DNA of 64,000 nt from Ylistrum balloti (taxonomy: Eukaryota): assembly GCF_031769215.1 (NCBI RefSeq), contig NW_026782173.1:806001-870000 (forward strand), given 5' to 3'. The notes under the pieces are model-generated. The model did not search any database. It was not told the DNA's origin and saw only the letters and a list, made by a program, of their open reading frames with translations. Position 1 is the first letter of the stretch, and every line of letters starts with the position of its first letter. The translations under genes were made by a program, and so were the position numbers. This document shows, piece by piece, positions 5,942 through 24,029 of this stretch.

Positions 5942-6802
5942 CTACCACTTCACCTTGCCGGGGATGTATTTCTCCACGAGTGCACTGTAATAGGCCTGGA
6001 GTTCATCCACATCCGGCGTCACAGCGCTCTTAGTGTACAAGTCAAACTTGTTAAATTCATTGATCCAATCCTTCATCTCTTCGTCCTTGTTGTTACTCAA
6101 GTATCCGTAAGCCCCACTCGAGTGCCAGGGGTAGAATGAGTGGTACCGGATCATGTACAAACCCTCTTCCGGTATCTTGCATGTGTTGAGGTCAGAGGTT
6201 AAGACGCGGTACAAATATTCATCATGGCCCCATGACAAAAGAACTTTATCCAATCCGCAGTTTTCCTCATACATTCCCAGTTTTGTATTGTATTTTTCAT
6301 TTTTCATGTCCGGATTATCTTTGAAACTCTCCCGCCCGAAAACGATTCGATCGTCTGGGAGACAGCCTACAGGAAAAGTGTCCCCTACCGTGGACCATTG
6401 TGGCTCCCCCCAGTGGGCCATAACTTTGCCTGCGTCGTGGATCAGACCTACCACATGGAACCAGTCTTTGTCCGGGTGCGCCCTACGAATACCCTCGGCA
6501 GTTTGATAGCCGTGCAAGGAATTCGGCATATCAACATCAGGATCACTTTCATCCAAAAACGAGTCAAGGGAATTCAACGCTTCCATCATGGTCATTTCGG
6601 CGTGATTGAATTTGCAATATTGGTCGATCTTTCCCTGGACATATTCCACTGTCTGAAAAGTATGCATGCTTTTGTATGTGTCAATGACCCGAGCGGGACA
6701 CGTATGGATGTTAAAATTTCGATATTCTGTTTTGTCCTTGTACTCTGGTCGGTATTCCGAGGGATCGCTTAAAACTATCCGTTTCTGCACTGTCGAAGCC
6801 AT
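5942..6802 (-). CDS. MIOX: Myo-inositol oxygenase (inositol oxygenase), 286 aa, single coding exon
   Basis: Full-length ORF with family motifs DESDPDVD, HGYQTAEGIR, HDAGK, EPQWSTVGDTFPVGC, SWGHDEY, IRYHSFYPWH and KFDLYTK. The di-iron His/Asp ligands are present. Ends KYIPGKVKW, like animal MIOX. Confidence 0.97.
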   Translation of the reverse strand: MASTVQKRIVLSDPSEYRPEYKDKTEYRNFNIHTCPARVIDTYKSMHTFQTVEYVQGKIDQYCKFNHAEMTMMEALNSLDSFLDESDPDVDMPNSLHGYQTAEGIRRAHPDKDWFHVVGLIHDAGKVMAHWGEPQWSTVGDTFPVGCLPDDRIVFGRESFKDNPDMKNEKYNTKLGMYEENCGLDKVLLSWGHDEYLYRVLTSDLNTCKIPEEGLYMIRYHSFYPWHSSGAYGYLSNNKDEEMKDWINEFNKFDLYTKSAVTPDVDELQAYYSALVEKYIPGKVKW

Positions 6803-8884
6803 TTGAGTCTCGATGTTCCAGTTTTAGAAAAAAACAGTAGCTGTGTATGTTCCTTGTGCAAGTCCGCGGTTAGTGTGCCAGGCACGACAGTCGTTTCAAT
6901 TTTAAATGTCTCTTGTCCTAGATAAACCCCAGGTCGACCTCGAGGCGGCTGTCCCCACCGATAAACAACCCATGCAATCTCGTCCCGAATTTGTCAATAC
7001 AAAACGTTCGACTTTTCACCTATAATGGTGTTCTATATACATTTCCTGATGAACTTGATTTTTTTTCAAGAATTGACTTATAAAATACGTAAAAGCAGTT
7101 TAGTCTCTATTTGATATATTGTACTTAAGAATCAATCAGGAGAAATACTGCTGCCATTCATAGTTCGTTGTTTATTGCCCCGTGAACAAACAGGATCATT
7201 CTGACGCAGTATCCTTGTAATAGCTGGGGGCTATCTCAGTGAGCAACACAGAGGAGGCCCGTCGCATGTCATCAAGAGTAATAAGGGTCCATTTCTCAAA
7301 GGTTATGTTTTCCGTTAACTTAAGGTATCCATTTTTCCCGATCTCATAAATATCTGTTTAGCATTAAGAATTATGGGGAGAGATTCCAAATTTCTATATA
7401 GCACATGTGTTTTGTTGCATTCCTACCCTGAAGGCTGAAGAACAGGGCCCAGAAAAGGGAATTACGTTTAACAGAAATTAATGTTTTGGCAAACTGGTCT
7501 TTAACGGGAGAGAAACAGAGATGGGTCGCAAGAGATTAGGTTATAAAAAACTACTTTAGCATTAACTAACATGCGTTTAGGTGCATCAAGTGTGGCTCCA
7601 GAAATGTTTCCGGAGAAAATGGAGAAACATGAGTATCTCGTTAGTCTAAAACTGTCAATTTTTCAGCTTTCTCAAACAGGAAATGTGGAAAGCAAAATGA
7701 TGGCACAACAGAAATTTTAAAATCATATCGCATGAATATGGAACAAGATCAGCTCGTAAAGAGTGAGGTAAAAGTCATTTCATATAGATGTCTTAATATT
7801 TAGTTTCTTGAGAGAATGTGGATTAAAAAAAACGCTCACACGACTATTTTTTAATTGTAAACTAAAACATTATGACCAAAAATGTTGAATGTCAGGTCTG
7901 GTATTTTGACGTTGTAAATGTGACAACACTTTTTACTTTAGTCATTATTTCGTCCACTAAGGGAACACCCGTGCACTTGCATTTTTTTCAACAGTGTTTA
8001 CAACAATGAAAATTGTGTGGCCTCATATTCAGACGAGGTCAATCTTGTCAAAATTTAGTTCAGAATGAACGAAAATGTATATCTTTACAAAATTTCAATA
8101 TATATACGCACACACGTCAATTATCGATATTGAATTATCCTCCTTTTCAATATGGCATCACAACATTTTTTTTTCACTCGGAGTGTGAACAAATAAGAAG
8201 AGTTCTACTCGTTGTCCTCGTGGCTCTTATCACAACAACCTGAGGTCAAACAGCCACGGTATCTGGAGTTCGTGCTCGACTGCCTTTAGAAAAGACTGGT
8301 GTCAAAAACAAGGCCGACATGAGTGTGAAACTTGGGTTACACAAACAGGTGTAGTGTTTATCATCTAGGTGTACCCACAAATCAAATAAGGCACACGATA
8401 TTTTATACATTGAGTTGCTATTGCTGAACGGTAGAGCATCGGACTAATCTAATGTATATTTTAATCCCTAGCTGGGCGGACTATGTTGTCTTGTTTAAGA
8501 CATCATAAATCAATTTCTATTGATACCAAGCGACGAGCCTCCCGAATGGTGTTCAGTGAGGTAGCCAATGTGACAGCGCCTCCAAAGGACACTGACTGTA
8601 CGATATATCTATCAAAACATCCAGTTCCCAGTCCGGTTGACCGAAAGACATGTGATAAACCTTCTCCTGCATAGATGGATAATGAAGTCCTTGGCCAAAT
8701 ATTTTGTTGGTCGACGAATGACAGATGTTGCAATAAGTACCGTTCCAGAAATTAAAAAGAGCAAGGTCGACGGCAGTGAATAATAATCTATATATAATAC
8801 AAGACTTTCATTTACTATGTAAGAAAAAAAGATCACAATATCGCTAACCCATATTGCTGCGGAACGTTAAGGATACTTACAGGA

Positions 8885-12066: not shown

Positions 12067-12371
12067 TTATTCTTGAAGAGGAAAGCGTAATGTAGTTTTG
12101 TAGGAGTTGTAACTTCCTCTACCCTTGATAACAAGTTGGTCGTTGTAAAGGTATGCTGTAGCGTAGGAATCGGTTTCAAGACTCTCTACAGTTCCGGGAA
12201 ATGTTATGTGCAATATACCGGAAAAATCTACACTACTTCCACCCTCGTGGTCATGACCAGCTAAGTAACAAACGACACAGTCACTGAAATCGGTTAAGAC
12301 CTCCATAGCATCTGTGCAGTTTAACAATAAATCCATATTGTTTGCGCTATGCTCAAATATAGGACAGTGAC
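12067..12371 (-). CDS. ADPRM: ADPRM paralog 1, coding exon 2 (332 aa total with exon 1)
   Basis: Acceptor ttttcaattttag| restores G-H-C-P; contains the CYLAGHDHEGG metal-ligand motif; TAA at 12067-12069. Exon sizes 694+305=999 nt, in frame. Confidence 0.93.
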
Positions 12372-12589
12372 CTAAAATTGAAAACAAACAAATAAATAAG
12401 TTACATATGATGCAAGGAACGATAATTGTAAAAACAACTGCCGGGTTTATGCTTCACTTTGAGTATACGTTTGCAACTACCCATGGAAACTCGTCTGATT
12501 GAAGCCTAATATTATGCAGTACATTTTCAATATTTACGTTGCCTCGCCGATAAATTTGAATTTTGTTGATTATGTAATACTGAACTTAC

Positions 12590-13283
12590 CCATGATTATA
12601 ACATTTACTCTCTTATTTGTAGCGTCCCTAAGGTGTTCCTTCAACCAGTCCATTTGTGTTCCTGATATTGCACCATTTAACTTAAGGAAACGACGACACA
12701 TTCCACGAAGTCCGTCAGGATCGTTCAAATTCTCCTTTGGATTATTGCCCTTTATTATTGTCTCGGCCTCTTTATAAGCAGGCGAGTCTTCTGACAATCC
12801 CAACATGCTTATTTCATAACAGTTAAGCACGACAACTTTCAACTTCCGATGTATGCTGAATGAGTAGTAAGATTTCCCCTTTGGACATGTGCATTGCGGC
12901 ATGTTACCACTAAATAGAGGGGTGCTCATGAGTTCTTCCTGTGTGAAATTATAGAGCTCATGGTTTCCCCATGTGTGATATATCGGACCCGGAAACGCTT
13001 TCAGTACTTCAAGAACCGTTCTTAAGGCACTTTCCGAAGCCTTCTCCTCTTTGTTGAATCCGTCGATGACATCACCAAGTTGAAGGACACAATTTGCTTC
13101 TTCCGCTGTCCAGTCTGATACGGCTCGTTGTAACAAGGTCAAGGCCTTTCGATAAAATCTTAATCGTGTTTTCCGGAAATTGTATCTATCTTCTATATCA
13201 GCATATTGTACATCCGCGATGATGCCCATCTTACACACCACTTCCTTTTCCTTTGTCAGTTCAGTGTTTCCGTTGCAATCCAT
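12590..13283 (-). CDS. ADPRM: ADPRM paralog 1 (Mn-dependent ADP-ribose/CDP-alcohol diphosphatase), coding exon 1
   Basis: Motifs GIIADVQYAD, YNF..TRLR.Y, QLGDVIDG and HTWGNHE of the ADPRibase-Mn metallophosphatase family. Donor ATG G|GTAAGT at 12589. Acceptor 16 nt upstream of the ATG. Confidence 0.95.
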
Positions 13284-14096
13284 ACTGGTATTTTTGCACC
13301 TGTAAAAAGCACCAGTAAATAATAACGGTCAAATTACATAATCATCATTATTTTGATAATGTGAAACAGCATAATGATGATTCGTCAACATATATTTAAA
13401 AATCCATCTATCGAAATCAAATTTGAATAAGAAATTCAAATAATACCTGAACATTTCAGTATCGGTATAAAGCTGACAACTGATACCAATTCCCAGTCTC
13501 ATAATATACATGCTGTACAATGAGCAAGGGGTCGGGAATCGGTTCAAAGCCCTGTAAAGTTGACTGATCATAAGATAGTGATTTTCCGCGGATAATTTGG
13601 ACCACTCAGACTAACTGAAATGGTACACTGAACGTGTGATTTACATACTATTTAGGCCTCAGTTTTTATGTCTATGTATATATTATGATGTAAGATTGGT
13701 GTTACTACAGACTTGAATGGTTCCGTAAAATTATTCGATATACATTGTCTATAAGTAAAACCCATTTCACAGCTTGTCCAAATACGACCGAATTTTTCAA
13801 CCTTATACCTTCATTATATTATTATCATTAATTGGACTAATGCAAGTCTATTGATATGTTACACGTACAGTGTGTGTATACATACACACGCTAGTGTTAT
13901 TGTGTGTGAACTACTCGCTATACATATATAATGTATCTCGATTGACATTTCATGTATAAACATAAACATAATTCAGTTAACGTTTAGTAAAACTATCTAA
14001 AGTCTTTTGCATGTCACATATACCAATCATGCTTAAACAGCTACTCTCGTACTTGTAAATCATATACATTTGTGGAGTAGTGTTCTATTAACCTAC

Positions 14097-14200
14097 CTGA
14101 CTGACCTCCGTCACCCTCTTTCCTTGCGTGGCTTTTGCTATCATTGAGGACCTGTTGACGTTGTTGACTAGTATCTGTTCAGACAATGACGTCAGCGGTG
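14097..14200 (-). promoter_or_regulatory. Candidate non-coding 5' exon of ADPRM paralog 1 with a full CRE palindrome (TGACGTCA, 14187-14194)
   Basis: Minus-strand donor CAG|GTAGGT at 14096. The acceptor at 13300-13301 requires an upstream exon. The GC-richer island contains TGACGTCA. The upstream boundary is not determinable. Confidence 0.35.
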
Positions 14201-16070
14201 CAGTTCATACTAAAACAAGTCACTAGCTTGACAACATAACAACTTCCAACTTCTCTCAAGTGTCACAGAAACACTAGGTCGGGGTGGAAACTACGGAAGG
14301 GAGATAACTCTAATATAAAACACACACGGAAACACTGTAATCTGATCTGGGTAAATAATGAATAAGGCATGAGCTACACGTAAATACAAGGACAGACATG
14401 TTGTATGTTACTAATATGCGTTAAAGCTAATTAACTGTATTGTCCATAAAACAATTTGCTTACTGAATTATTTACTTAAAAGTTATCATGGAATTATAAA
14501 GAAGTTTGTTGTATAGTCTGTTATATACAATGTACAATGTACACTGAAGCACAACGAAGCTTATTGCGGCGTATAATTCAAGCCTCGAGATAATTAGCAC
14601 CAGTGCACATGTCTCCTTAGCAACTCATTGTCAGCGAACTTTCCATGCACGAGTGACCTCTCTTGCATTACTAGGTTAATTTACAAATGTCGCCGTCACC
14701 CGAATATGAATGAAGAAATAAGTGAAATGGGACTTATTATGAAAAAAATTAATGTGTTTAAAAAGGAACGTTGTTATACTTTCCCAAAGAATGTCACTTA
14801 ACAATATTGTTCCTCTTCTTAAACATGAAAATAATGTTAATGGAATCATCTGTTTCATGCATGATTTGGTTCATAACTTACTCTGTTACATGTGACTGTC
14901 TCGTGTGACAATCTATTACTACAAGAAAGAGGACGAGATGAAAAAATCTTTGTGAATTGTGAAATTATCATCTTCCGGCCTTTAATCAAACGCCAATAAC
15001 AAAATTAAGCTTATCGTATGTCTTCGTCATACAACAACACTGTACGTCATGTAATATAACAAGATCCAACAGTTATTAGATACAAAACATTACAAAGAAA
15101 ATGTACCCGTGGTATATCAATTAGCGATTAGAAATTAGCTTGATTGGCAACGAGGAAAAATAAAGCAAAATTCAAAATCAACTGTAGTGGTATGATCATA
15201 ACAAAGCCGCTGGGTTCGATGTTTCACTTTTATTAAGAGAGAAACATTCCAGAAAAATACAGAGACAGACTTACTGACAAAAGAATCCAACCGTTCACAC
15301 GGAGAGAGAACAATAATAGAAAGACAGACACTTTCAACCAATCTTACAACTTCATCAAAGTCCGTCAAGTGTCACATGTCGAGTCTGTAGCTGACCACAA
15401 CTTACATACAACACACATACATACGTACAAAGCTAAAAACAAAGAAACGTACTCGACAACCAATTCAGTATATTGTACTAAACGACAAATTAATTTATTT
15501 TAAATCCAACATAATTTGACAATTATATTATAACTTAATATTTTTGACCTTGTTACATAACTACAAAAATAGCTATTAACTGGCCTGAGTTTAATAATTA
15601 AGTATATGTAGTTACTTTAAGTTGGAAAGTCAAGGTAAAGGATAAACAAAAATGACTCCCCCCTCCTCCCCTCAAATGGTTAGTTAGAGCGACTACGAGA
15701 CAAATGTTTGAAAATGTATAAAAGCCCACTATGTACACGTACCTGTATCAAGACTATAAGGAAAATTATATCACGTGAGATGAAGCTGCATTAATGCCGA
15801 TCAATACACAAGTTAACGTTTTGAAAAAAAGGTAATTAATATGGGACAGTCCTCGAGTTACCGTTGTATCTCGACATCATATTAACCTTGTCGTTAACTT
15901 AGGAACTTTCCAGTTAGTAACGTGTTAAATGACGTAAGGTCATTCCGTTTGATTATGATGTCACAATTCAAATCATGCCAACTTTTCTCATTATTGGTCG
16001 ACCAGTATATTACACTTGAAACATTAAATGAATTTTCCGCACTTGAAAACGTCTTTTTCTTAAGTTATAT

Positions 16071-16372
16071 CTAGCTGATTGGAAACTTGAGTTTTGCTTC
16101 GTGGGATGAGTAACTTCCCATGCCCTTTATGACTAATCGGTCACTGTAGAGGTAGGCTGTTGCATTAGCATCCATATCTTCACTTTCTATAACTCCGGCA
16201 AATGTTACGTGTAGTATACCGGAACTGTCCACGTAACTTCCGCCCTCGTGGTAATGACCGGCGAAGTAGCAGAGTACACACGCGCTGTATGTAGCTATTG
16301 CTGCCATGATTTCTGCGTAGTTTAAGCATAGAAACATGTTGTTTGTACTCTTCTCACAAATCGGAACATGAC
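16071..16372 (-). CDS. ADPRM: ADPRM paralog 2, coding exon 2 (329 aa total)
   Basis: Acceptor tttttcctatttaag| restores G-H-V-P; contains CYFAGHYHEGG; TAG at 16071-16073. Exon sizes 688+302=990 nt, in frame. Confidence 0.93.
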
Positions 16373-16702
16373 CTTAAATAGGAAAAATACAAGATTCATT
16401 AATTAGTTTCTGTACCTGGATCTGCCAGCGACAAACACATATTACGGATCAACAGTATTTGTCATTAGTTCAATGTAATGCGATCTGTTTAGAATTTAAA
16501 ATGAATTCGTCTCTCACTTGCTACATTGTCACGTTTAACTGAATTCGTTACAAAAAGTACGCAGTGACACGAGTTATATGATTTTAATATGACCGTAAAA
16601 CAAGGCAGAAAAAACGACGAAATTTCTACGTCATCAAATTGGATGTACAAACCGATTAATATTCATTAATATACACGCTCATATATTTATAAGAAAGCTT
16701 AC

Positions 16703-17390
16703 CCATTATGATGACGTTTTCCTGATCTTCTTCAGCCTTTTGTAAAATTTCTTTCAACCATTTCAGTTGGGAATTTGACACCATTCCATTAAATTTGACA
16801 AACCGACGATTTGATCCCTGCAATCCATCTGGATTGTTCAAACTCTCATTTGGATTATTTTTTGAGATCAGTTCATAGGCCTCTTTGTATTCTGCGGAGT
16901 CTTTTGGTAGACCCAACATACTTATTTCATAACAATTCAGTACCACAACTTTCAGCTTCCTGTGAATGTTGAACGAATAATACGTCTTTCCATCTGGGCA
17001 TGCGCACTGTGGCATGTTACCACTGAACAAAAGGGATCTTTTAAGCTCCTCCTGTGTGAAGTTGTACAATTCATGGTTTCCCCACGTGTGGTAAATTGGA
17101 CCCGGAAATAGATTTAAAATATCAATAACTGATGCAAGTGCACTTCCGGAAGCGTTGTGTACTGTGTTCAATCCATCTATGATGTCACCGAGTTGAAGAA
17201 CACAATCCACTCCCTTGATTGTCCAGTTGGTAACCGCTCGTTCGAGTTTACCAAGAGATTTCCTGTAATTTCTTAGTCGTGTTTTATGGAAGTTGTACCT
17301 TTCTTCTAAGTCGCCATACTGGACATCAGCGATGATACCGAAACTGCATTCTGCACCTAAACAAACTGATTCTGGACAATTCAGAGTCAT
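16703..17390 (-). CDS. ADPRM: ADPRM paralog 2, coding exon 1
   Basis: Motifs GIIADVQYGD, QLGDIIDG and HTWGNHE. Donor ATG G|GTAAGC at 16702. Acceptor ttattttccag| 5 nt before the ATG. Confidence 0.95.
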
Positions 17391-19910
17391 GATTTCTGGA
17401 AAATAAATATGTTATCTTTACATGATATATTTAGACAAATTATTTATGTATAACGGTAATAATACAAACGATTGTTATGTTACAATGAACATGGTTACTT
17501 TCAGACATGCTGATCGCTGATGCACTACCACGTGTATTTCTTAAAGTAGACTTAAATCGCCATGCATCATTAAGTATAGAAATAAAATTTTCAATGGTTC
17601 AAAGTGATAACAATAATCTTGTTATATACACTCATAGTTCATCAAATCTAGTAAACCAGTCTTTCGAGAATCTTACATATTGTATATGATTCGGTAAAGA
17701 TGTACAATCTGGACATGCCAGTAAAGGTATGACTGTGTTTATGGGTCACTCTTTATTATATACCGGATGTATCAACAAATTCAACTGCCACGTCACCGAA
17801 AATGATTTCACAACAACGTGTAAAATAAAGGGAGGCAACTCCCGTGAGTTTTTGTGGCCAACATAGGCAATGCCCACCCTCTAAATGAAACTTCGCTTTT
17901 CTTGCATACCAAAGACGATTAATAGCTCTCAAAACGAATCTAGTACTTTAAATTAATATTTATATAGGGTGACGTGACATGTAATTTTAATTTGTTTTAT
18001 AGAATGTCGTGTTATGACCTTAAAATCAACGGAACCACAAGTATCACTATTATGTCCGTCTACACAGAGTAACCAGACGTGGGAAACATCGGACAAATTT
18101 GAGACAGCGAGATTTGTACTCAAAGTATCATGCCAATATTGATGGACGGATATTATATAATTACAGAAATACTTCTCCATCCTCTAAGAAGAAAGAAGGA
18201 TACAAACTACACTTGTTAAGATTATACTACACTTAGATACATAGGCATTACACTAACCGTATTATATTTTCATTTCCGTTTGTATTTCATACCTACATTA
18301 AATATTATTTCACAAACAAAATGGTACAGTCCATTCCGAACATAATAACAGATAATTACAATCGTTATATTATAAAAAAAAATCAACATGACAAGCCATA
18401 TTGCATCAACATTAAAACAATTTTATTTTCCTTGAATACTTTCAGAATTTAACATTTCATGTCGTTTCCTTTAGATAAAAATATTTCTTATAAATCATTT
18501 GAAAGACATTTACATATTAATACTGTATTAGAAATATACAATTGGAGAAATGTATCACATGACATACACAACACAGATAAAACTTTAACCAAACAATTTT
18601 ATGTATCCCGCACTCCATTATTTTACTCCAGTTACTAAATGTCGTAAATTGATTAAAGATCAATTAGTGCATGCTCCATATCAATAAATACTTTCAACAA
18701 TTAGTTAGGATAGGATCACTCTATGGATTTCGTTTTATTTCATATCATTTGTAAGAGATGTAAAAATGTGTTTTCCATTACAAAAATACAAATAACTATT
18801 AAATAAAATGATTCTCAATCACAATCAACAGTTTTATTTCAGGAAATAGATATTTCAGGTGTTAACTACCGTCATACATTTTTTGAAGGATAAACAAGAA
18901 GCTTTTTATTAATACGCATAAAATCAACCTGCATTATGTTTTAAAACTGATGAACAAAAGCAAAGAAAAGTAGAAATACTTGTTTTAGAAGGGAGATAAC
19001 TCCCACAGCTAAGTCAATCATGACGAGATCAGGTTGAAATTGCATTAGACTTCCTCTTTTGTGTTATATACATGTTTTGATCAGTGTGAAGACACAATAG
19101 TAAGCATTAATAGAGGACTTAATAATGTAGACTAAACTATATAAATTGCATATAGAGGCACTTGATGTTCTGATTAGGCTAGGAAAGGACAAATGTACAT
19201 CGTAATTCAAATAAAAATATTGTGAAGTGTGGTGAACTTTTATAAGAAATATATAGAAAGAAAATTAAAATTACCCCTGAAACAGAAATATTTCGGACAT
19301 GTAAAGATAAAACTAAATTTGTAACATTGATAAGCTGACTGAATTAATTATCTACTTATATGAGAAGTACCTCAATGAAAAAAAAAAAAAAAAAAAAACA
19401 TGGGTCATTGTCACAAATGAATTATTGAATGACCATATACGACCGAGACAACCATTATTAAAAATAAAACGGGGAAAGTCATGAAACCTAAAAAATAAAA
19501 GTAGATGTATAGTTTTATCTACACCTATGTGTATTATTAACATGGTCCCTTAAACCTACCAACTTTCATTAAAATTCCCAAAGACAAAAAACCAAAACTA
19601 AAAAATTATGTCAAATTATTAATGTAAATGGGAATCAAATCAACAACGACAAATTACATCGGAAATAAAAGAAATAATTTAATACTACACTTCCAAGGTA
19701 AGAAAATAAAAAAGGGAATATTAGTCTCATATAACTATATAAACCAAAATGACTATTAGAATTGATTGAAAATAAATATTTGATAAAATCCGTTATAATT
19801 CATCCTGAAGTTAGATATCAAAATGAAAAAAGTCATGTGTTGCGGATATGTATATGGTATGATCTAAGTTTATGTAAACCAAACATGACCTGTCTGTCTT
19901 TTTTCTATAA

Positions 19911-20212
19911 TCATGTGATAGGGTATCTGAGTTTTGTTTCAAAGGAAGGATAACTCCCTTTCCCATGTATGGCGAAGCTGTCTTTGTAGAGGTAGGCTGT
20001 AGCATGGGCATCTGGTTCCGAACTTTCCACAGTTCCGGGAAAAGTCACGTGCAGAATTCCGGAACTGTCCACACAACTTCCGCCTTCGTGATCATGTCCG
20101 GCCAAATAACAAAGTACACATTCTCCGTGATTCGACAGTATTTTCAAAATGTCCTCATGGTCATAACATAAACATGCACTGTCTGCACTTCCCTCATGTA
20201 TGGATATATGTC
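19911..20212 (-). CDS. ADPRM: ADPRM paralog 3, coding exon 2 (333 aa total)
   Basis: Acceptor tttttgttttctag| gives GHISIHEGSADSACLCYDHEDILKILSNHGECVLCYLAGHDHEGG; TGA at 19911-19913. Exon sizes 700+302=1002 nt, in frame. Confidence 0.93.
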
Positions 20213-20791: not shown

Positions 20792-21491
20792 CAATAATGA
20801 TAACATTAGTCTCGTTCTCTCTGGCCTCTTGTAGGGTCTCGTTTAACCACTGCAGTTGTAAGGAAGACAAAGTACCATTAAATTTCACAAAACGCCGATC
20901 TGTTCCAGTAAGACCCACCGGAGAGTTAAGATCCTCGTTTGGATTTTTATCTCTGAGCATTTTTTCTGCCTGTGTATACTCTTCAGATCCCTCTGGTAGT
21001 CCAAGCATGCTTATTTCGTAACAATTCAATACCAAAACCTTTAACTTCCTGTGAACATGGAATGAGTAGTAGGACTTTCCTTCAGGACATGTGCACTGAG
21101 GCAAGTTACCGCTAAACAGAACTGAGTTCATTAGTTCTTTCTGTGTGAAGTTGTAGAGTTCATGATTTCCCCACGTGTGGTAAACCGGAACCGCAACATG
21201 TTTAAGCGCTTCGGTTACTGTTGCTAAGGCACTATCGGACGCATTCTCAGCTTTGTTGAACCCATCGATGATGTCACCAAGTTGAAGGACGCAGTCAACA
21301 TTTTCAGTGCTCCAATCCGTAACGGCCCTTTTCAGTAAGGTCAAAGCCTTTCGATAAAACCGTAAACGTGTTTTGGTGAAATTGAAACGATCCTCTAGAT
21401 TTGCATACTGTACATCAGCGATAATGCCAACTTTACATATGGGTTCTTGATGATTTTGCGTGGATGATTCAGATGTACAGTTTGTTAACAT
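20792..21491 (-). CDS. ADPRM: ADPRM paralog 3, coding exon 1 (start MLTNCTSESS at 21491)
   Basis: Motifs GIIADVQYAN, QLGDIIDG and HTWGNHE. Donor ATT G|GTATGT at 20791. A strong acceptor tcgtcttcttttccag| lies 18 nt before ATG 21491, so the longer ORF-track start at 21563 is probably intronic. Confidence 0.94.
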
Positions 21492-21935
21492 ATCCAAGAC
21501 AATGTTGATCTGGAAAAGAAGACGATTCCGTGAAAAGAACATAAACTTAATAACAAATCTCAAAAAGACATTTTGCCTATTCGTGTGCTAATTTTCGCCA
21601 CAATATTTAAAATACAGTTTTCACTGCTGTAAATACACAGATATTTACTCAAGAAAGAATGCATGTACCAATCAAGATATGTTTCAGAGATAAAGATTTA
21701 TTGTGCATGTTATGAAGTAATCGAACAAGTATTTTTTTAAAATTGACCTCATGGTTCTGCTGTGTTCGTAAGCGATCGTTACCATTGTTTAACATATCAC
21801 ATTATCTACACAGAATCATTGCAGATGTCAATTAATAAGATAGAATATAGTTTTTGTTGTCACAATACTAGACCCCAGTAATGATAATATCTGAATGTGC
21901 ATTTTATGGTATGTACATTGTTGTACTCCGAGTAG

Positions 21936-22290
21936 TCGGACAATCTGTCATCCACATTCTGGTGTGTGGCACATTGAATGGATGGATGATGGATCATTCA
22001 CTTTCTAGTGTGTGGCACATTGAATGGTTGGACGATGACTCGTCCACATTCTGGTGTGTGGCACATTGAATGGATGGACGATGACTCGTCCACATTCTGG
22101 TGTGTGACACATTGAATGGTTGGACGATGACTCGTCCACATTCTGGTGTGTGGCACATTGAATGGTTGGACGAAGACTCGTCCACATTCTGGTGTGTGGC
22201 ACATTAAATGGTTGGACGATGACTCGTCCACATTCTGGTGTGTGGCACATTGAATGGTTGGACGATGACTCGTCCACATTCTAGTGTGTG
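21936..22290. repeat. 46-bp minisatellite, ~7.5 units, each with a 7-bp-stem hairpin
   Basis: Consensus tgtggcacattgaatggttggacgatgactcgtccacattctggtg. The cgtcc motif recurs at 22041, 22087, 22133, 22179, 22225 and 22271 (period 46). Internal inverted repeat TGGACGA-tgac-TCGTCCA. Confidence 0.97.
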
Positions 22291-23202: not shown

Positions 23203-24029
23203 GGGCCATATATTGGAAGACTACCCAGTGTAAGTACGTTATGTATGATCGTAGCAAAATATTTAAATGCTCTCTGTACTAAAATGTTTAGTTCTGTTTT
23301 CAGACTTTCAAAAACAAAGTAGTGGAAAGGGTTTTTGGGAAATGTTGCCTAAACATGCAACCAGCCACACATAAAAATGTACTATACTAATATAGTTTGC
23401 ATTTACTACACCTGTTGTCTCACAGGAAAAGTATGTTTATAAAATATTTAATTAATAATTGCAGAAGGACCATTTAGTTTCATATCTATTGTTATCACCA
23501 CAATAATACAATTCTACCAACAAAGTTACTTTATTAATCAAATCTAAAATATCTTTTAAAAACTTGCCTAATCTACATCAGGGACGCTATCTACGCCCCT
23601 GTCTACATGTATATACATACTACATAGTCTGTCTGAAGTAGATTTAGAGAACACACCTGAAGTGGAGATTGTAGATATGCCCTCACGTTATGGTTGAGTA
23701 AGGACAATCGCTGATGTACACACAGACGTGGGAGTTCAAGTATGAGAGCAGCCCAAACCAGTTTCATTCAGAATCCTCTATGACAAGGCTCCTTACCCAC
23801 TTCTGATGATACGTTTGTTTTTACTCAAGTGTTCCGGTTAAGGGGCATAACTCTAACATATTTGTTCATGCCGGTTCAGAGTGGCATTTTTGAGACGCTT
23901 CCCTAATCTCATCAAGCAATCTCTAACAAGAAAAACAGAAACAGTTTAGGTAATCCCGTTATGTAATTCAGCCATATTACTCATGAATGTTTCATGACTT
24001 ATCAGATAATACGATAAAGATGTATACAA

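What the first reader, a model, noticed from the sequence alone, without database searches (positions are those of the whole stretch)
12331..20174. Three different residues (Asp, Phe, Cys) at the pocket position that gates cyclic-ADP-ribose hydrolysis
Seen: counting 12 codons from the exon-2 His ligand gives Asp in copy 1 (GAT, 12331-12333), Phe in copy 2 (TTT, 16332-16334) and Cys in copy 3 (TGT, 20172-20174). Known (recalled human numbering H241-LPIYPDASDNV-C253): mutating Cys253 to Ala selectively raises cADPR phosphohydrolase activity. Inference: an acidic, a bulky aromatic and an ancestral residue at this one site point to three different specificities. The neighbouring W256/N257 positions also differ (L-N, L-N, Y-D).
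Basis: partly seen in the sequence, partly recalled or inferred. Interest (0 to 1): 0.7.

Follow-up and report, generated by a model that had tools for sequence, protein, structure and literature searches.

The report
Three scallop ADPRM paralogues, divergent pockets
A scallop carries three old, intact, side-by-side copies of the enzyme ADPRM that keep the same catalytic core but each hold a different residue (Asp, Phe or Cys) at a pocket position known from human mutants to tune substrate choice, which makes them a natural but still untested experiment in enzyme specificity.

Summary
On the minus strand of this Ylistrum balloti (scallop) window lie three intact ADPRM-like genes. The codon 12 residues after the motif-IV His ligand is GAT (Asp), TTT (Phe) and TGT (Cys). 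It aligns without gaps to zebrafish Cys240, the equivalent of human Cys253.

A three-way difference in one genome is not unusual: 20% of columns show one. The cross-species evidence is what counts:
- The triplication is shared, in the same gene order, by Pecten and Mizuhopecten; Argopecten encodes all three types, with c2 then c1 adjacent.
- Each residue is kept within its orthologue group: DDDN, FFFF, CCCC.
- All three genes are under purifying selection (dN/dS 0.08-0.18).
- This column is the best three-way discriminator of 320.
- The Phe copy also carries Tyr/Phe at the human Thr279 position.
- All scallop copies lack the near-invariant Trp256.

Across 130 diverse family representatives the site is variable but 93% small residues; Asp, Phe and Tyr are rare.

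"Three different specificities" remains inference. Published mutants predict that the bulky Phe copy is worse, not better, on cyclic ADP-ribose. No expression or enzyme data exist. This is ordinary gene-family divergence, well documented, and a good enzymology lead.

The parts
12067..12371 (-). Copy 1 (c1-type, 332 aa, = P0007), last coding exon including the stop. It holds the motif-IV His233, Asp245 and the motif-V GHDH.
   Evidence: AG acceptor, phase-1 join, translation identical to NCBI's Ylistrum balloti protein.
12590..13283 (-). Copy 1, first coding exon (Met1 to the first base of Gly232). It holds motifs I-III, Phe37/Arg43 equivalents and Leu202 at the human Phe210 position.
12331..12333 (-). 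Copy 1 codon GAT = Asp245, the human Cys253 position.
   Evidence: Orthologues: Asp in Pecten and Argopecten, Asn (AAT) in Mizuhopecten.
16071..16372 (-). Copy 2 (c2-type, 329 aa, = P0010), last coding exon including the stop.
16703..17390 (-). Copy 2, first coding exon.
16332..16334 (-). Copy 2 codon TTT = Phe243, the human Cys253 position.
   Evidence: Phe (TTT) in all four genera.
16251..16253 (-). Copy 2 codon TAC = Tyr270 in G-H-Y-H, the human Thr279 position. It is aromatic only in the c2 group (Y, F, F, Y); Asp in the c1 and c3 groups.
   Evidence: PMC5773619 places Thr279 near the same 'northern' ribose as Cys253.
19911..20212 (-). Copy 3 (c3-type, 376 aa in NCBI's model, = P0001), last coding exon including the stop.
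20792..21509 (-). Copy 3, large middle coding exon (motifs I-III).
   Evidence: AG acceptor at 21511-21510, GT donor after 20792.
23657..23767 (-). Copy 3, upstream coding exon (37 aa, net charge +3). It is present in the c3-type gene of all four genera and absent from the c1 and c2 types; possibly a targeting peptide.
   Evidence: GT donor.
20172..20174 (-). Copy 3 codon TGT = Cys290, the human Cys253 position.
   Evidence: Cys (TGT) in all four genera.
20163..20165 (-). Copy 3 codon TAT = Tyr293 at the human Trp256 position. Copies 1 and 2 have Leu (12322-12324, 16323-16325).
   Evidence: Trp in 125 of 130 family representatives.

Best explanation
[quoted passage not shown] They arose in the scallop lineage after it split from oysters and before Ylistrum, Pecten, Argopecten and Mizuhopecten diverged. 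All three have been kept as working enzymes. Shown: intact reading frames and splice sites, all metal ligands and catalytic residues unchanged, purifying selection on each gene, and conserved gene order. Also shown: the substitutions that separate the three orthologue groups concentrate in the lining of the substrate pocket, and the human Cys253 position is the strongest three-way discriminator. Inferred: the chemistry is the same (attack by a metal-bridged water on the phosphoanhydride or phosphodiester), but the sub-site that holds the part of the substrate distal to the nucleoside differs. That part is the terminal ribose of ADP-ribose, the 'northern' ribose of cADPR, or the alcohol of CDP-alcohols. 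So the three enzymes would have different substrate preferences. The c3-type (Cys290 with Asp317) is closest to the canonical enzyme and additionally carries a conserved N-terminal extension. The c2-type replaces two pocket residues with aromatics (Phe243, Tyr270), which removes volume and one negative charge; by the published steric logic it should be poor on cADPR and may favour smaller or hydrophobic/cationic leaving groups. The c1-type puts a second acidic residue (Asp245) beside Asp272, which may favour cationic alcohols such as choline or ethanolamine. Which substrates each copy actually prefers is not known.
For: Identity and integrity: 2NXF is the only solved sequence relative (E 1e-22). 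Pfam Metallophos is above cut-off for all three. An AlphaFold model of copy 2 has pLDDT 94.9 and matches 2NXF at TM 0.90/0.94. Introns are GT/AG, and my models equal NCBI's proteins. Motif residues D, Q, D, N, H, H, H, H and the Phe37 and Arg43 equivalents are invariant in all 12 scallop genes. Age and retention: the scallop clade has 100/100 support and is sister to oysters, with three starred orthologue groups. The gene order c3, c2, c1 is the same in Pecten and Mizuhopecten; in Argopecten c2 is followed by c1, with the c3-type gene on the same contig but outside the fetched flank. dN/dS between Ylistrum and Pecten is 0.08, 0.18 and 0.15 at dS 0.7-1.1, and paralogue dS is saturated. Pocket divergence: the site reads DDDN / FFFF / CCCC and ranks 1st of 320 columns as a three-way discriminator. 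Other top columns flank the His ligand (zebrafish 229, 232), Phe37 and Arg43 (26, 32) and motif V (266, 272). Top discriminators are enriched near literature active-site residues (P 0.002-0.08 over several definitions), and 3 of the 12 strictly fixed discriminating columns lie within 7 residues of the site (P 0.012). Rarity: among 130 representatives at 50% identity the column is 93% small residues. Apart from the scallop cluster's own representative, Asp occurs in 3, Phe in 1 and Tyr in 1, and none has aromatics at both the 253 and 279 positions. Functional relevance of the positions: C253A raises cADPR efficiency 11-fold, C253V lowers cADPR kcat, and D250, V252, C253 and T279 all lie near the northern ribose.
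Against: There is no biochemical data for any mollusc ADPRM and no expression evidence here; the only run holding this stretch is genomic DNA. The position tolerates several residues across the family, and every human mutant at 253 stayed active, so the differences could be near-neutral. Within-group conservation is expected for most columns at dN/dS of 0.1-0.2. Enrichment in the paper-defined family-unique regions alone is not significant (P 0.23). My active-site shell was defined after seeing the ranking and uses distance along the sequence, not in space. Cys does not by itself decide cADPR activity, as the contrast between zebrafish and rat shows.
Confidence: 0.55

Rival explanations
1. The three genes were retained for reasons other than substrate choice: different tissues, timing or cell compartments, or dosage. 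On this reading the pocket differences are near-neutral changes at a tolerant position that became fixed early in each lineage.
For: The column varies among C, T, A, N, S, G and V across the family. Human C253A, C253G and C253V are all active enzymes. The c3-type alone has a conserved, positively charged N-terminal exon that could direct it elsewhere in the cell. With dN/dS of 0.1-0.2, most columns are conserved within a group anyway.
Against: This column is the most radical three-way discriminator of 320, and the other top discriminators cluster round the active site. Asp and Phe are rare states family-wide. Phe co-occurs with an aromatic at the adjacent Thr279 position in all four genera, which looks coordinated, not random.
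Confidence: 0.27
2. One or two copies (most plausibly c2, with its filled pocket) no longer hydrolyse nucleotides efficiently. They would act as binding proteins, or on a quite different phosphoester, outside the ADP-ribose/CDP-alcohol range.
For: c2 loses pocket volume and an acidic residue (Phe243, Tyr270). All scallop copies lack Trp256 (Trp in 96% of representatives) and the otherwise invariant Asp at zebrafish position 148. Phe210, whose mutation to Ala costs 40-70-fold in the human enzyme, is Leu in most c1 and c2 genes.
Against: Every metal ligand, the GNHE His and Arg43 are intact in all 12 genes. Purifying selection is strong. The copy 2 model is a confident, complete 2NXF-like fold.
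Confidence: 0.08
3. The pattern is an artefact: mis-assembly, annotation error, or a misalignment that puts the residues off the Cys253 site.
For: None found.
Against: The alignment from the His ligand to the site is ungapped in 2NXF and in nearly all homologues. The codons are the same in three other scallop genome assemblies. An independent DNA run of Ylistrum covers the Asp and Phe codons without a listed difference.
Confidence: 0.01

Closest known systems
Human ADPRM (ADPRibase-Mn, EC 3.6.1.53) and its Cys253 mutants (PMC4334965, PMC5773619)
   Same: Same family and fold. Same motif residues (Gln27, Asn110, His111, Arg43, Phe37 equivalents). Same spacing from the His ligand to the site (12 residues) and from Phe210 to the His (31 residues).
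   Different: Human has Cys253, Val252, Thr279 and Trp256. The scallop copies have Asp, Phe or Cys; Met, Met or Ala; Asp, Tyr or Asp; Leu, Leu or Tyr. The engineered changes that favour cADPR make residues smaller (Ala, Gly). The natural scallop changes add bulk (c2) or charge (c1).
Zebrafish ADPRM, PDB 2NXF, the structural prototype
   Same: 38% identity to copy 2, TM 0.90/0.94, rmsd 2.0 A. Cys240 and Asp266 as in the c3-type.
   Different: A single-copy gene. It has Trp243 and Pro230/Pro233, which scallops have replaced. It has the Cys but no cADPR phosphohydrolase activity.
Single-copy mollusc ADPRM-like proteins (Crassostrea, Saccostrea, Lottia, Patella, Aplysia)
   Same: Nearest relatives on the tree. 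They are uncharacterised biochemically and keep the same catalytic residues.
   Different: One gene each in the fetched hits. The site is Asn (oysters, Lottia) or Cys (Patella, Aplysia), and Trp256 is retained.
Biomphalaria glabrata ADPRM-like protein (XP_055897755)
   Same: Another mollusc protein with a bulky aromatic (Tyr) at the Cys253 position.
   Different: Arg, not an aromatic, at the Thr279 position. Trp256 is retained. It is not part of the scallop clade.

Membership tests
ADPRibase-Mn-like family (ADPRM) within the metallo-dependent phosphatase superfamily | The five dispersed metallophosphatase motifs, with Gln instead of His in motif I: D-x-Q, G-D, G-N-H-E, H, G-H-x-H | tested here: met
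   All present in the three copies and in all 12 scallop genes. Pfam PF00149 is above its gathering score for each.
ADPRibase-Mn-like family (ADPRM) within the metallo-dependent phosphatase superfamily | The family-unique s2s3 element with the Phe37 (specificity) and Arg43 (catalytic) equivalents | tested here: met
   The peptide N-F-x-K-T-R-L-R is conserved; Phe and Arg are invariant in 12 of 12 scallop genes.
ADPRibase-Mn-like family (ADPRM) within the metallo-dependent phosphatase superfamily | The family-unique h7h8 element with the Phe210 equivalent | tested here: inconclusive
   The element is present and aligns. The Phe210 position, mapped by its 31-residue spacing, is Phe in the c3-type but Leu in 3 of 4 c1-type and 3 of 4 c2-type genes. 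Leu196 could not be mapped, because no human sequence was at hand.
ADPRibase-Mn-like family (ADPRM) within the metallo-dependent phosphatase superfamily | Fold of the structural prototype 2NXF | tested here: met
   Copy 2 model: pLDDT 94.9. The best PDB match is 2nxf (E 1.7e-38, TM 0.90/0.94); the next match has TM 0.60. Copies 1 and 3 were not modelled.
ADPRibase-Mn-like family (ADPRM) within the metallo-dependent phosphatase superfamily | Phylogenetic placement among recognised ADPRM orthologues | tested here: met
   The scallop clade is sister to oyster ADPRM-like proteins, inside a mollusc group, next to vertebrates. [quoted passage not shown]
ADPRibase-Mn-like family (ADPRM) within the metallo-dependent phosphatase superfamily | [quoted passage not shown] | not testable with these tools
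   This needs recombinant protein. No invertebrate member has been assayed.
cADPR phosphohydrolase activity (a property of mammalian ADPRM and of engineered mutants) | A small residue (Ala or Gly) or at most Cys at position 253, with room for the northern ribose | tested here: not met
   This applies to copies 1 and 2: Asp245 is similar in size to Cys but charged, and Phe243 plus Tyr270 is much bulkier. Copy 3 has Cys290 with Ala289, which is compatible, but the Ala is not conserved in its orthologues (A, V, L, V). The prediction comes from the literature only.

The most novel reading that the evidence does not exclude
The scallop triplet is a naturally specialised set of nucleotide 'erasers'. 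On this reading, at least one copy has a primary substrate outside the canonical ADP-ribose/CDP-alcohol range, for example a cyclic or NAD-derived signalling nucleotide. The Asp, Phe or Cys residue, together with the Thr279-position residue, would be the main switch. That would make these the first natural ADPRM enzymes with switched specificity.
Probability: 0.15. Interest if true: 0.7.

Novelty: new member of a known kind. Interest (0 to 1): 0.42.

Why it matters
ADPRM is the only known enzyme that opens cyclic ADP-ribose at its phosphoanhydride bond. Its specificity has so far been studied only through engineered human mutants, and no invertebrate member has been assayed. The scallop genes offer three natural, long-maintained variants at exactly the positions those studies found decisive (253, 252, 279, 210), on otherwise identical catalytic machinery. 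Assaying them would show whether position 253 is a real evolutionary specificity switch or only a laboratory one. It might also yield natural enzymes selective for particular nucleotides. If they turn out alike, the case becomes a clean example of paralogue retention without change of specificity.

Tried and rejected
1. Expression: the single run that holds the stretch (X1) is genomic DNA of another individual, with contigs continuous through introns and intergenic DNA. So there is no evidence for or against transcription or the splice junctions.

2. Pfam on the last-exon peptides alone gave nothing useful; the whole proteins were needed.

3. A second word search, seeded with the Lottia protein to widen invertebrate sampling, returned mostly vertebrates again. 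The representative library was therefore used.

4. Enrichment of strictly fixed discriminating columns in the paper-defined unique regions s2s3, h2 and h7h8 was not significant (P 0.23).

5. Order of the two duplications: the three groups form an unresolved trichotomy.

6. Ancestral state at the duplication node: Cys and Asn are both plausible, and counting codon steps does not decide.

7. Human Leu196 was not mapped. No human protein was among the fetched sequences, and I did not type one from memory.

8. Side-chain contacts (Phe243 to Tyr270, distance to the metals) could not be measured, because the structure tool returns no coordinates. Pocket location rests on the published docking models.

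9. Earlier notes of this scan hold only the sibling note on the same stretch.

10. Rejected: pseudogenes or assembly artefact, and recent duplication or gene conversion, because paralogue dS is saturated.


Full report
WHAT IS THERE

The window has no N runs. [quoted passage not shown]

Three genes lie head to tail on the minus strand:
- Copy 1: 13283-12590 plus 12371-12067, 332 aa.
- Copy 2: 17390-16703 plus 16372-16071, 329 aa.
- Copy 3: 23767-23657 plus 21509-20792 plus 20212-19911, 376 aa.

All introns are GT..AG. The intron before the last exon is phase 1 and splits the Gly codon just before the motif-IV His ligand. tblastn finds no further copy in the window.

CHECKING THE OBSERVATION

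Twelve codons after that His the minus strand reads:

| Copy | Codon | Coordinates | Residue |
|---|---|---|---|
| 1 | GAT | 12333-12331 | Asp245 |
| 2 | TTT | 16334-16332 | Phe243 |
| 3 | TGT | 20174-20172 | Cys290 |

- The only solved relative is zebrafish ADPRM, 2NXF. The alignment from His228 to Cys240 has no gap.
- Published mutagenesis primers give the human peptide PIYPDASDNVCLAWN.
- A DNA run from another individual covers copies 1 and 2 and lists no difference at the Asp or Phe codon.

By itself it is not beyond chance. The paralogues are only 61-63% identical, and 65 of 327 columns (20%) have three different residues.

WHAT THE LITERATURE SAYS

- In human ADPRM, C253A raises kcat/Km for cADPR about 11-fold with little change for ADP-ribose, CDP-choline or 2',3'-cAMP (PMC4334965).
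- C253G does slightly better in a mutant background, and C253V lowers cADPR kcat. Asp250, Val252, Cys253 and Thr279 all lie near the 'northern' ribose of docked cADPR (PMC5773619).
[quoted passage not shown] The zebrafish enzyme has the Cys yet lacks cADPR activity. Mollusc homologues exist but have never been assayed.
- No paper in the library links ADPRM with scallops.

AGE AND RETENTION

- In a maximum-likelihood tree, 11 scallop proteins form one clade (100/100) that is sister to oysters. It splits into three starred orthologue groups, whose branching order is unresolved.
- Pecten maximus and Mizuhopecten yessoensis carry the same three genes in the same order and orientation (c3-type, c2-type, c1-type). 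In Argopecten irradians the c2-type is followed by the c1-type, and its c3-type protein is encoded on the same contig.
- Nei-Gojobori dN/dS between Ylistrum and Pecten orthologues is 0.08 (c1), 0.18 (c2) and 0.15 (c3), at dS 0.7-1.1. dS between paralogues is saturated, so there has been no recent gene conversion.
- Every metal ligand, the GNHE His, and the Phe37 and Arg43 equivalents are invariant in all 12 genes.
- A model of copy 2 is confident (pLDDT 94.9, pTM 0.93). It matches 2NXF at TM 0.90/0.94, with the next hit at 0.60.

These are three functional, anciently duplicated ADPRM genes.

THE SITE ACROSS SCALLOPS

| Group | Cys253 position (4 genera) | Codons | Thr279 position | Trp256 position | Phe210 position |
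|---|---|---|---|---|---|
| c1-type | D, D, D, N | GAT; AAT in Mizuhopecten | D | L | L, L, L, F |
| c2-type | F, F, F, F | TTT | Y, F, F, Y | L | F, L, L, L |
| c3-type | C, C, C, C | TGT | D | Y | F, F, F, F |

- Of 320 columns in the 12-gene alignment, 137 are identical throughout and 171 vary within some group. Only 12 are fixed within each group yet differ between groups, and only one of those is strictly three-state.
- Columns were ranked by BLOSUM62 similarity within groups minus similarity between groups.
- The other leading columns are zebrafish positions 232 and 229 (just after the His ligand), 26 and 32 (next to Phe37 and Arg43), and 266, 272 and 242.
- Three of the 12 strict discriminators lie within 7 residues of the site (P 0.012).
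- The top 10-20 discriminators are enriched within 2-5 residues of literature-defined active-site residues.
- That shell is linear and was chosen by me, so I treat the enrichment as supportive and not decisive. Enrichment in the paper's 'unique regions' alone is not significant (P 0.23).

THE SITE ACROSS THE FAMILY

In 103 mostly vertebrate homologues the column is C 62, T 11, N 6, S 6, with F and D only in scallops.

I ran a profile search of 1.84 billion representatives, used because the claim rests on rarity elsewhere. It gave 1,212 proteins at E 1e-30 or better. In the 130 best with aligned motifs:

| Human position | Residues in 130 representatives |
|---|---|
| Cys253 | C 64, T 28, A 10, N 8, S 5, D 4, G 3, V 3, and one each of E, L, Y, I, F |
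| Trp256 | W in 125 |
| Thr279 | aromatic in 8 |

- So the position is variable but 93% small residues.
- Apart from the scallop cluster's own representative, Asp occurs in 3 clusters (a diplonemid and metagenome sequences), Tyr in the snail Biomphalaria and Phe in one metagenome protein.
- No cluster has aromatics at both positions 253 and 279.
- Cys occurs in amphioxus, a hemichordate, a crinoid, Patella and Aplysia. Asn occurs in oysters and Lottia. Cys is therefore probably ancestral for bilaterians, but the state at the scallop duplication is ambiguous.

INTERPRETATION

Shown:
- Three retained, catalytically intact paralogues.
- Paralogue-specific, long-conserved and radical differences at the Cys253 position and at neighbouring pocket positions.
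- A coordinated aromatic pair in the c2-type, and a scallop-wide loss of Trp256.

Inferred:
- The sub-site for the non-nucleoside part of the substrate differs, and so substrate preference differs.
- The published steric series (Gly, Ala better than Cys, Cys better than Val for cADPR) predicts that the c2-type is a poor cADPR hydrolase.
- The c1-type has two acidic residues (Asp245, Asp272) where the c3-type has one and the c2-type none. That could discriminate cationic alcohols, but this is speculation.

I put 0.55 on real specificity divergence involving this pocket, 0.27 on retention for regulatory or localisation reasons with near-neutral pocket changes, and 0.08 on loss or a radical change of activity in some copy.

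LIMITS

- No RNA evidence was available, and no enzyme data exist.
- No model coordinates were available for measuring contacts.
- Human Leu196 was not mapped.

No finding on other DNA was returned.

Noticed in passing
window 5945-6823 (-): A 293-aa open stretch matches the whole Pfam MIOX domain (myo-inositol oxygenase, E 6e-109, profile positions 3-249 of 249) in one uninterrupted frame, about 5 kb downstream of copy 1.
   Followed up: partly
window 21951-22290: A 46-bp tandem repeat, 7.4 copies, 93% matches, inside the first intron of copy 3. It produces long spurious open frames on the minus strand.
   Followed up: partly
window 23657-23767 (-); L001 1360-1473; L003 from 3775: Only the c3-type gene has an extra N-terminal coding exon (23-40 aa). 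It is conserved in four genera, Leu/Arg/Cys/Ser-rich with net charge +3, and could be an organelle-targeting or signal peptide. It was not tested with a predictor.
   Followed up: partly
window 16338; 12207, 12224, 12297: The DNA run X1 (another individual) carries Asn241Lys in copy 2, two residues before Phe243. In copy 1 it carries Phe281Ser, Ile287Val and Leu257Val. At 281 and 287 the alternative allele equals the residue of the other two paralogues, so the reference allele looks derived there.
   Followed up: partly
exon 1 of all three copies (12590-13283, 16703-17390, 20792-21509): All 11 scallop proteins have Asn where 92 of 92 other homologues have Asp (zebrafish Asp148; LLDAYD becomes VLNCYE). 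They also share changes at other well-conserved columns: Arg104 to Gln, Pro233 to Glu (Lys in one), Phe6 to Cys. The stem branch of the scallop clade is long (0.5).
   Followed up: no
P0269 (Biomphalaria glabrata XP_055897755): A snail ADPRM-like protein has Tyr at the Cys253 position and Arg at the Thr279 position. Bulky residues at this site may thus have arisen more than once in molluscs.
   Followed up: no
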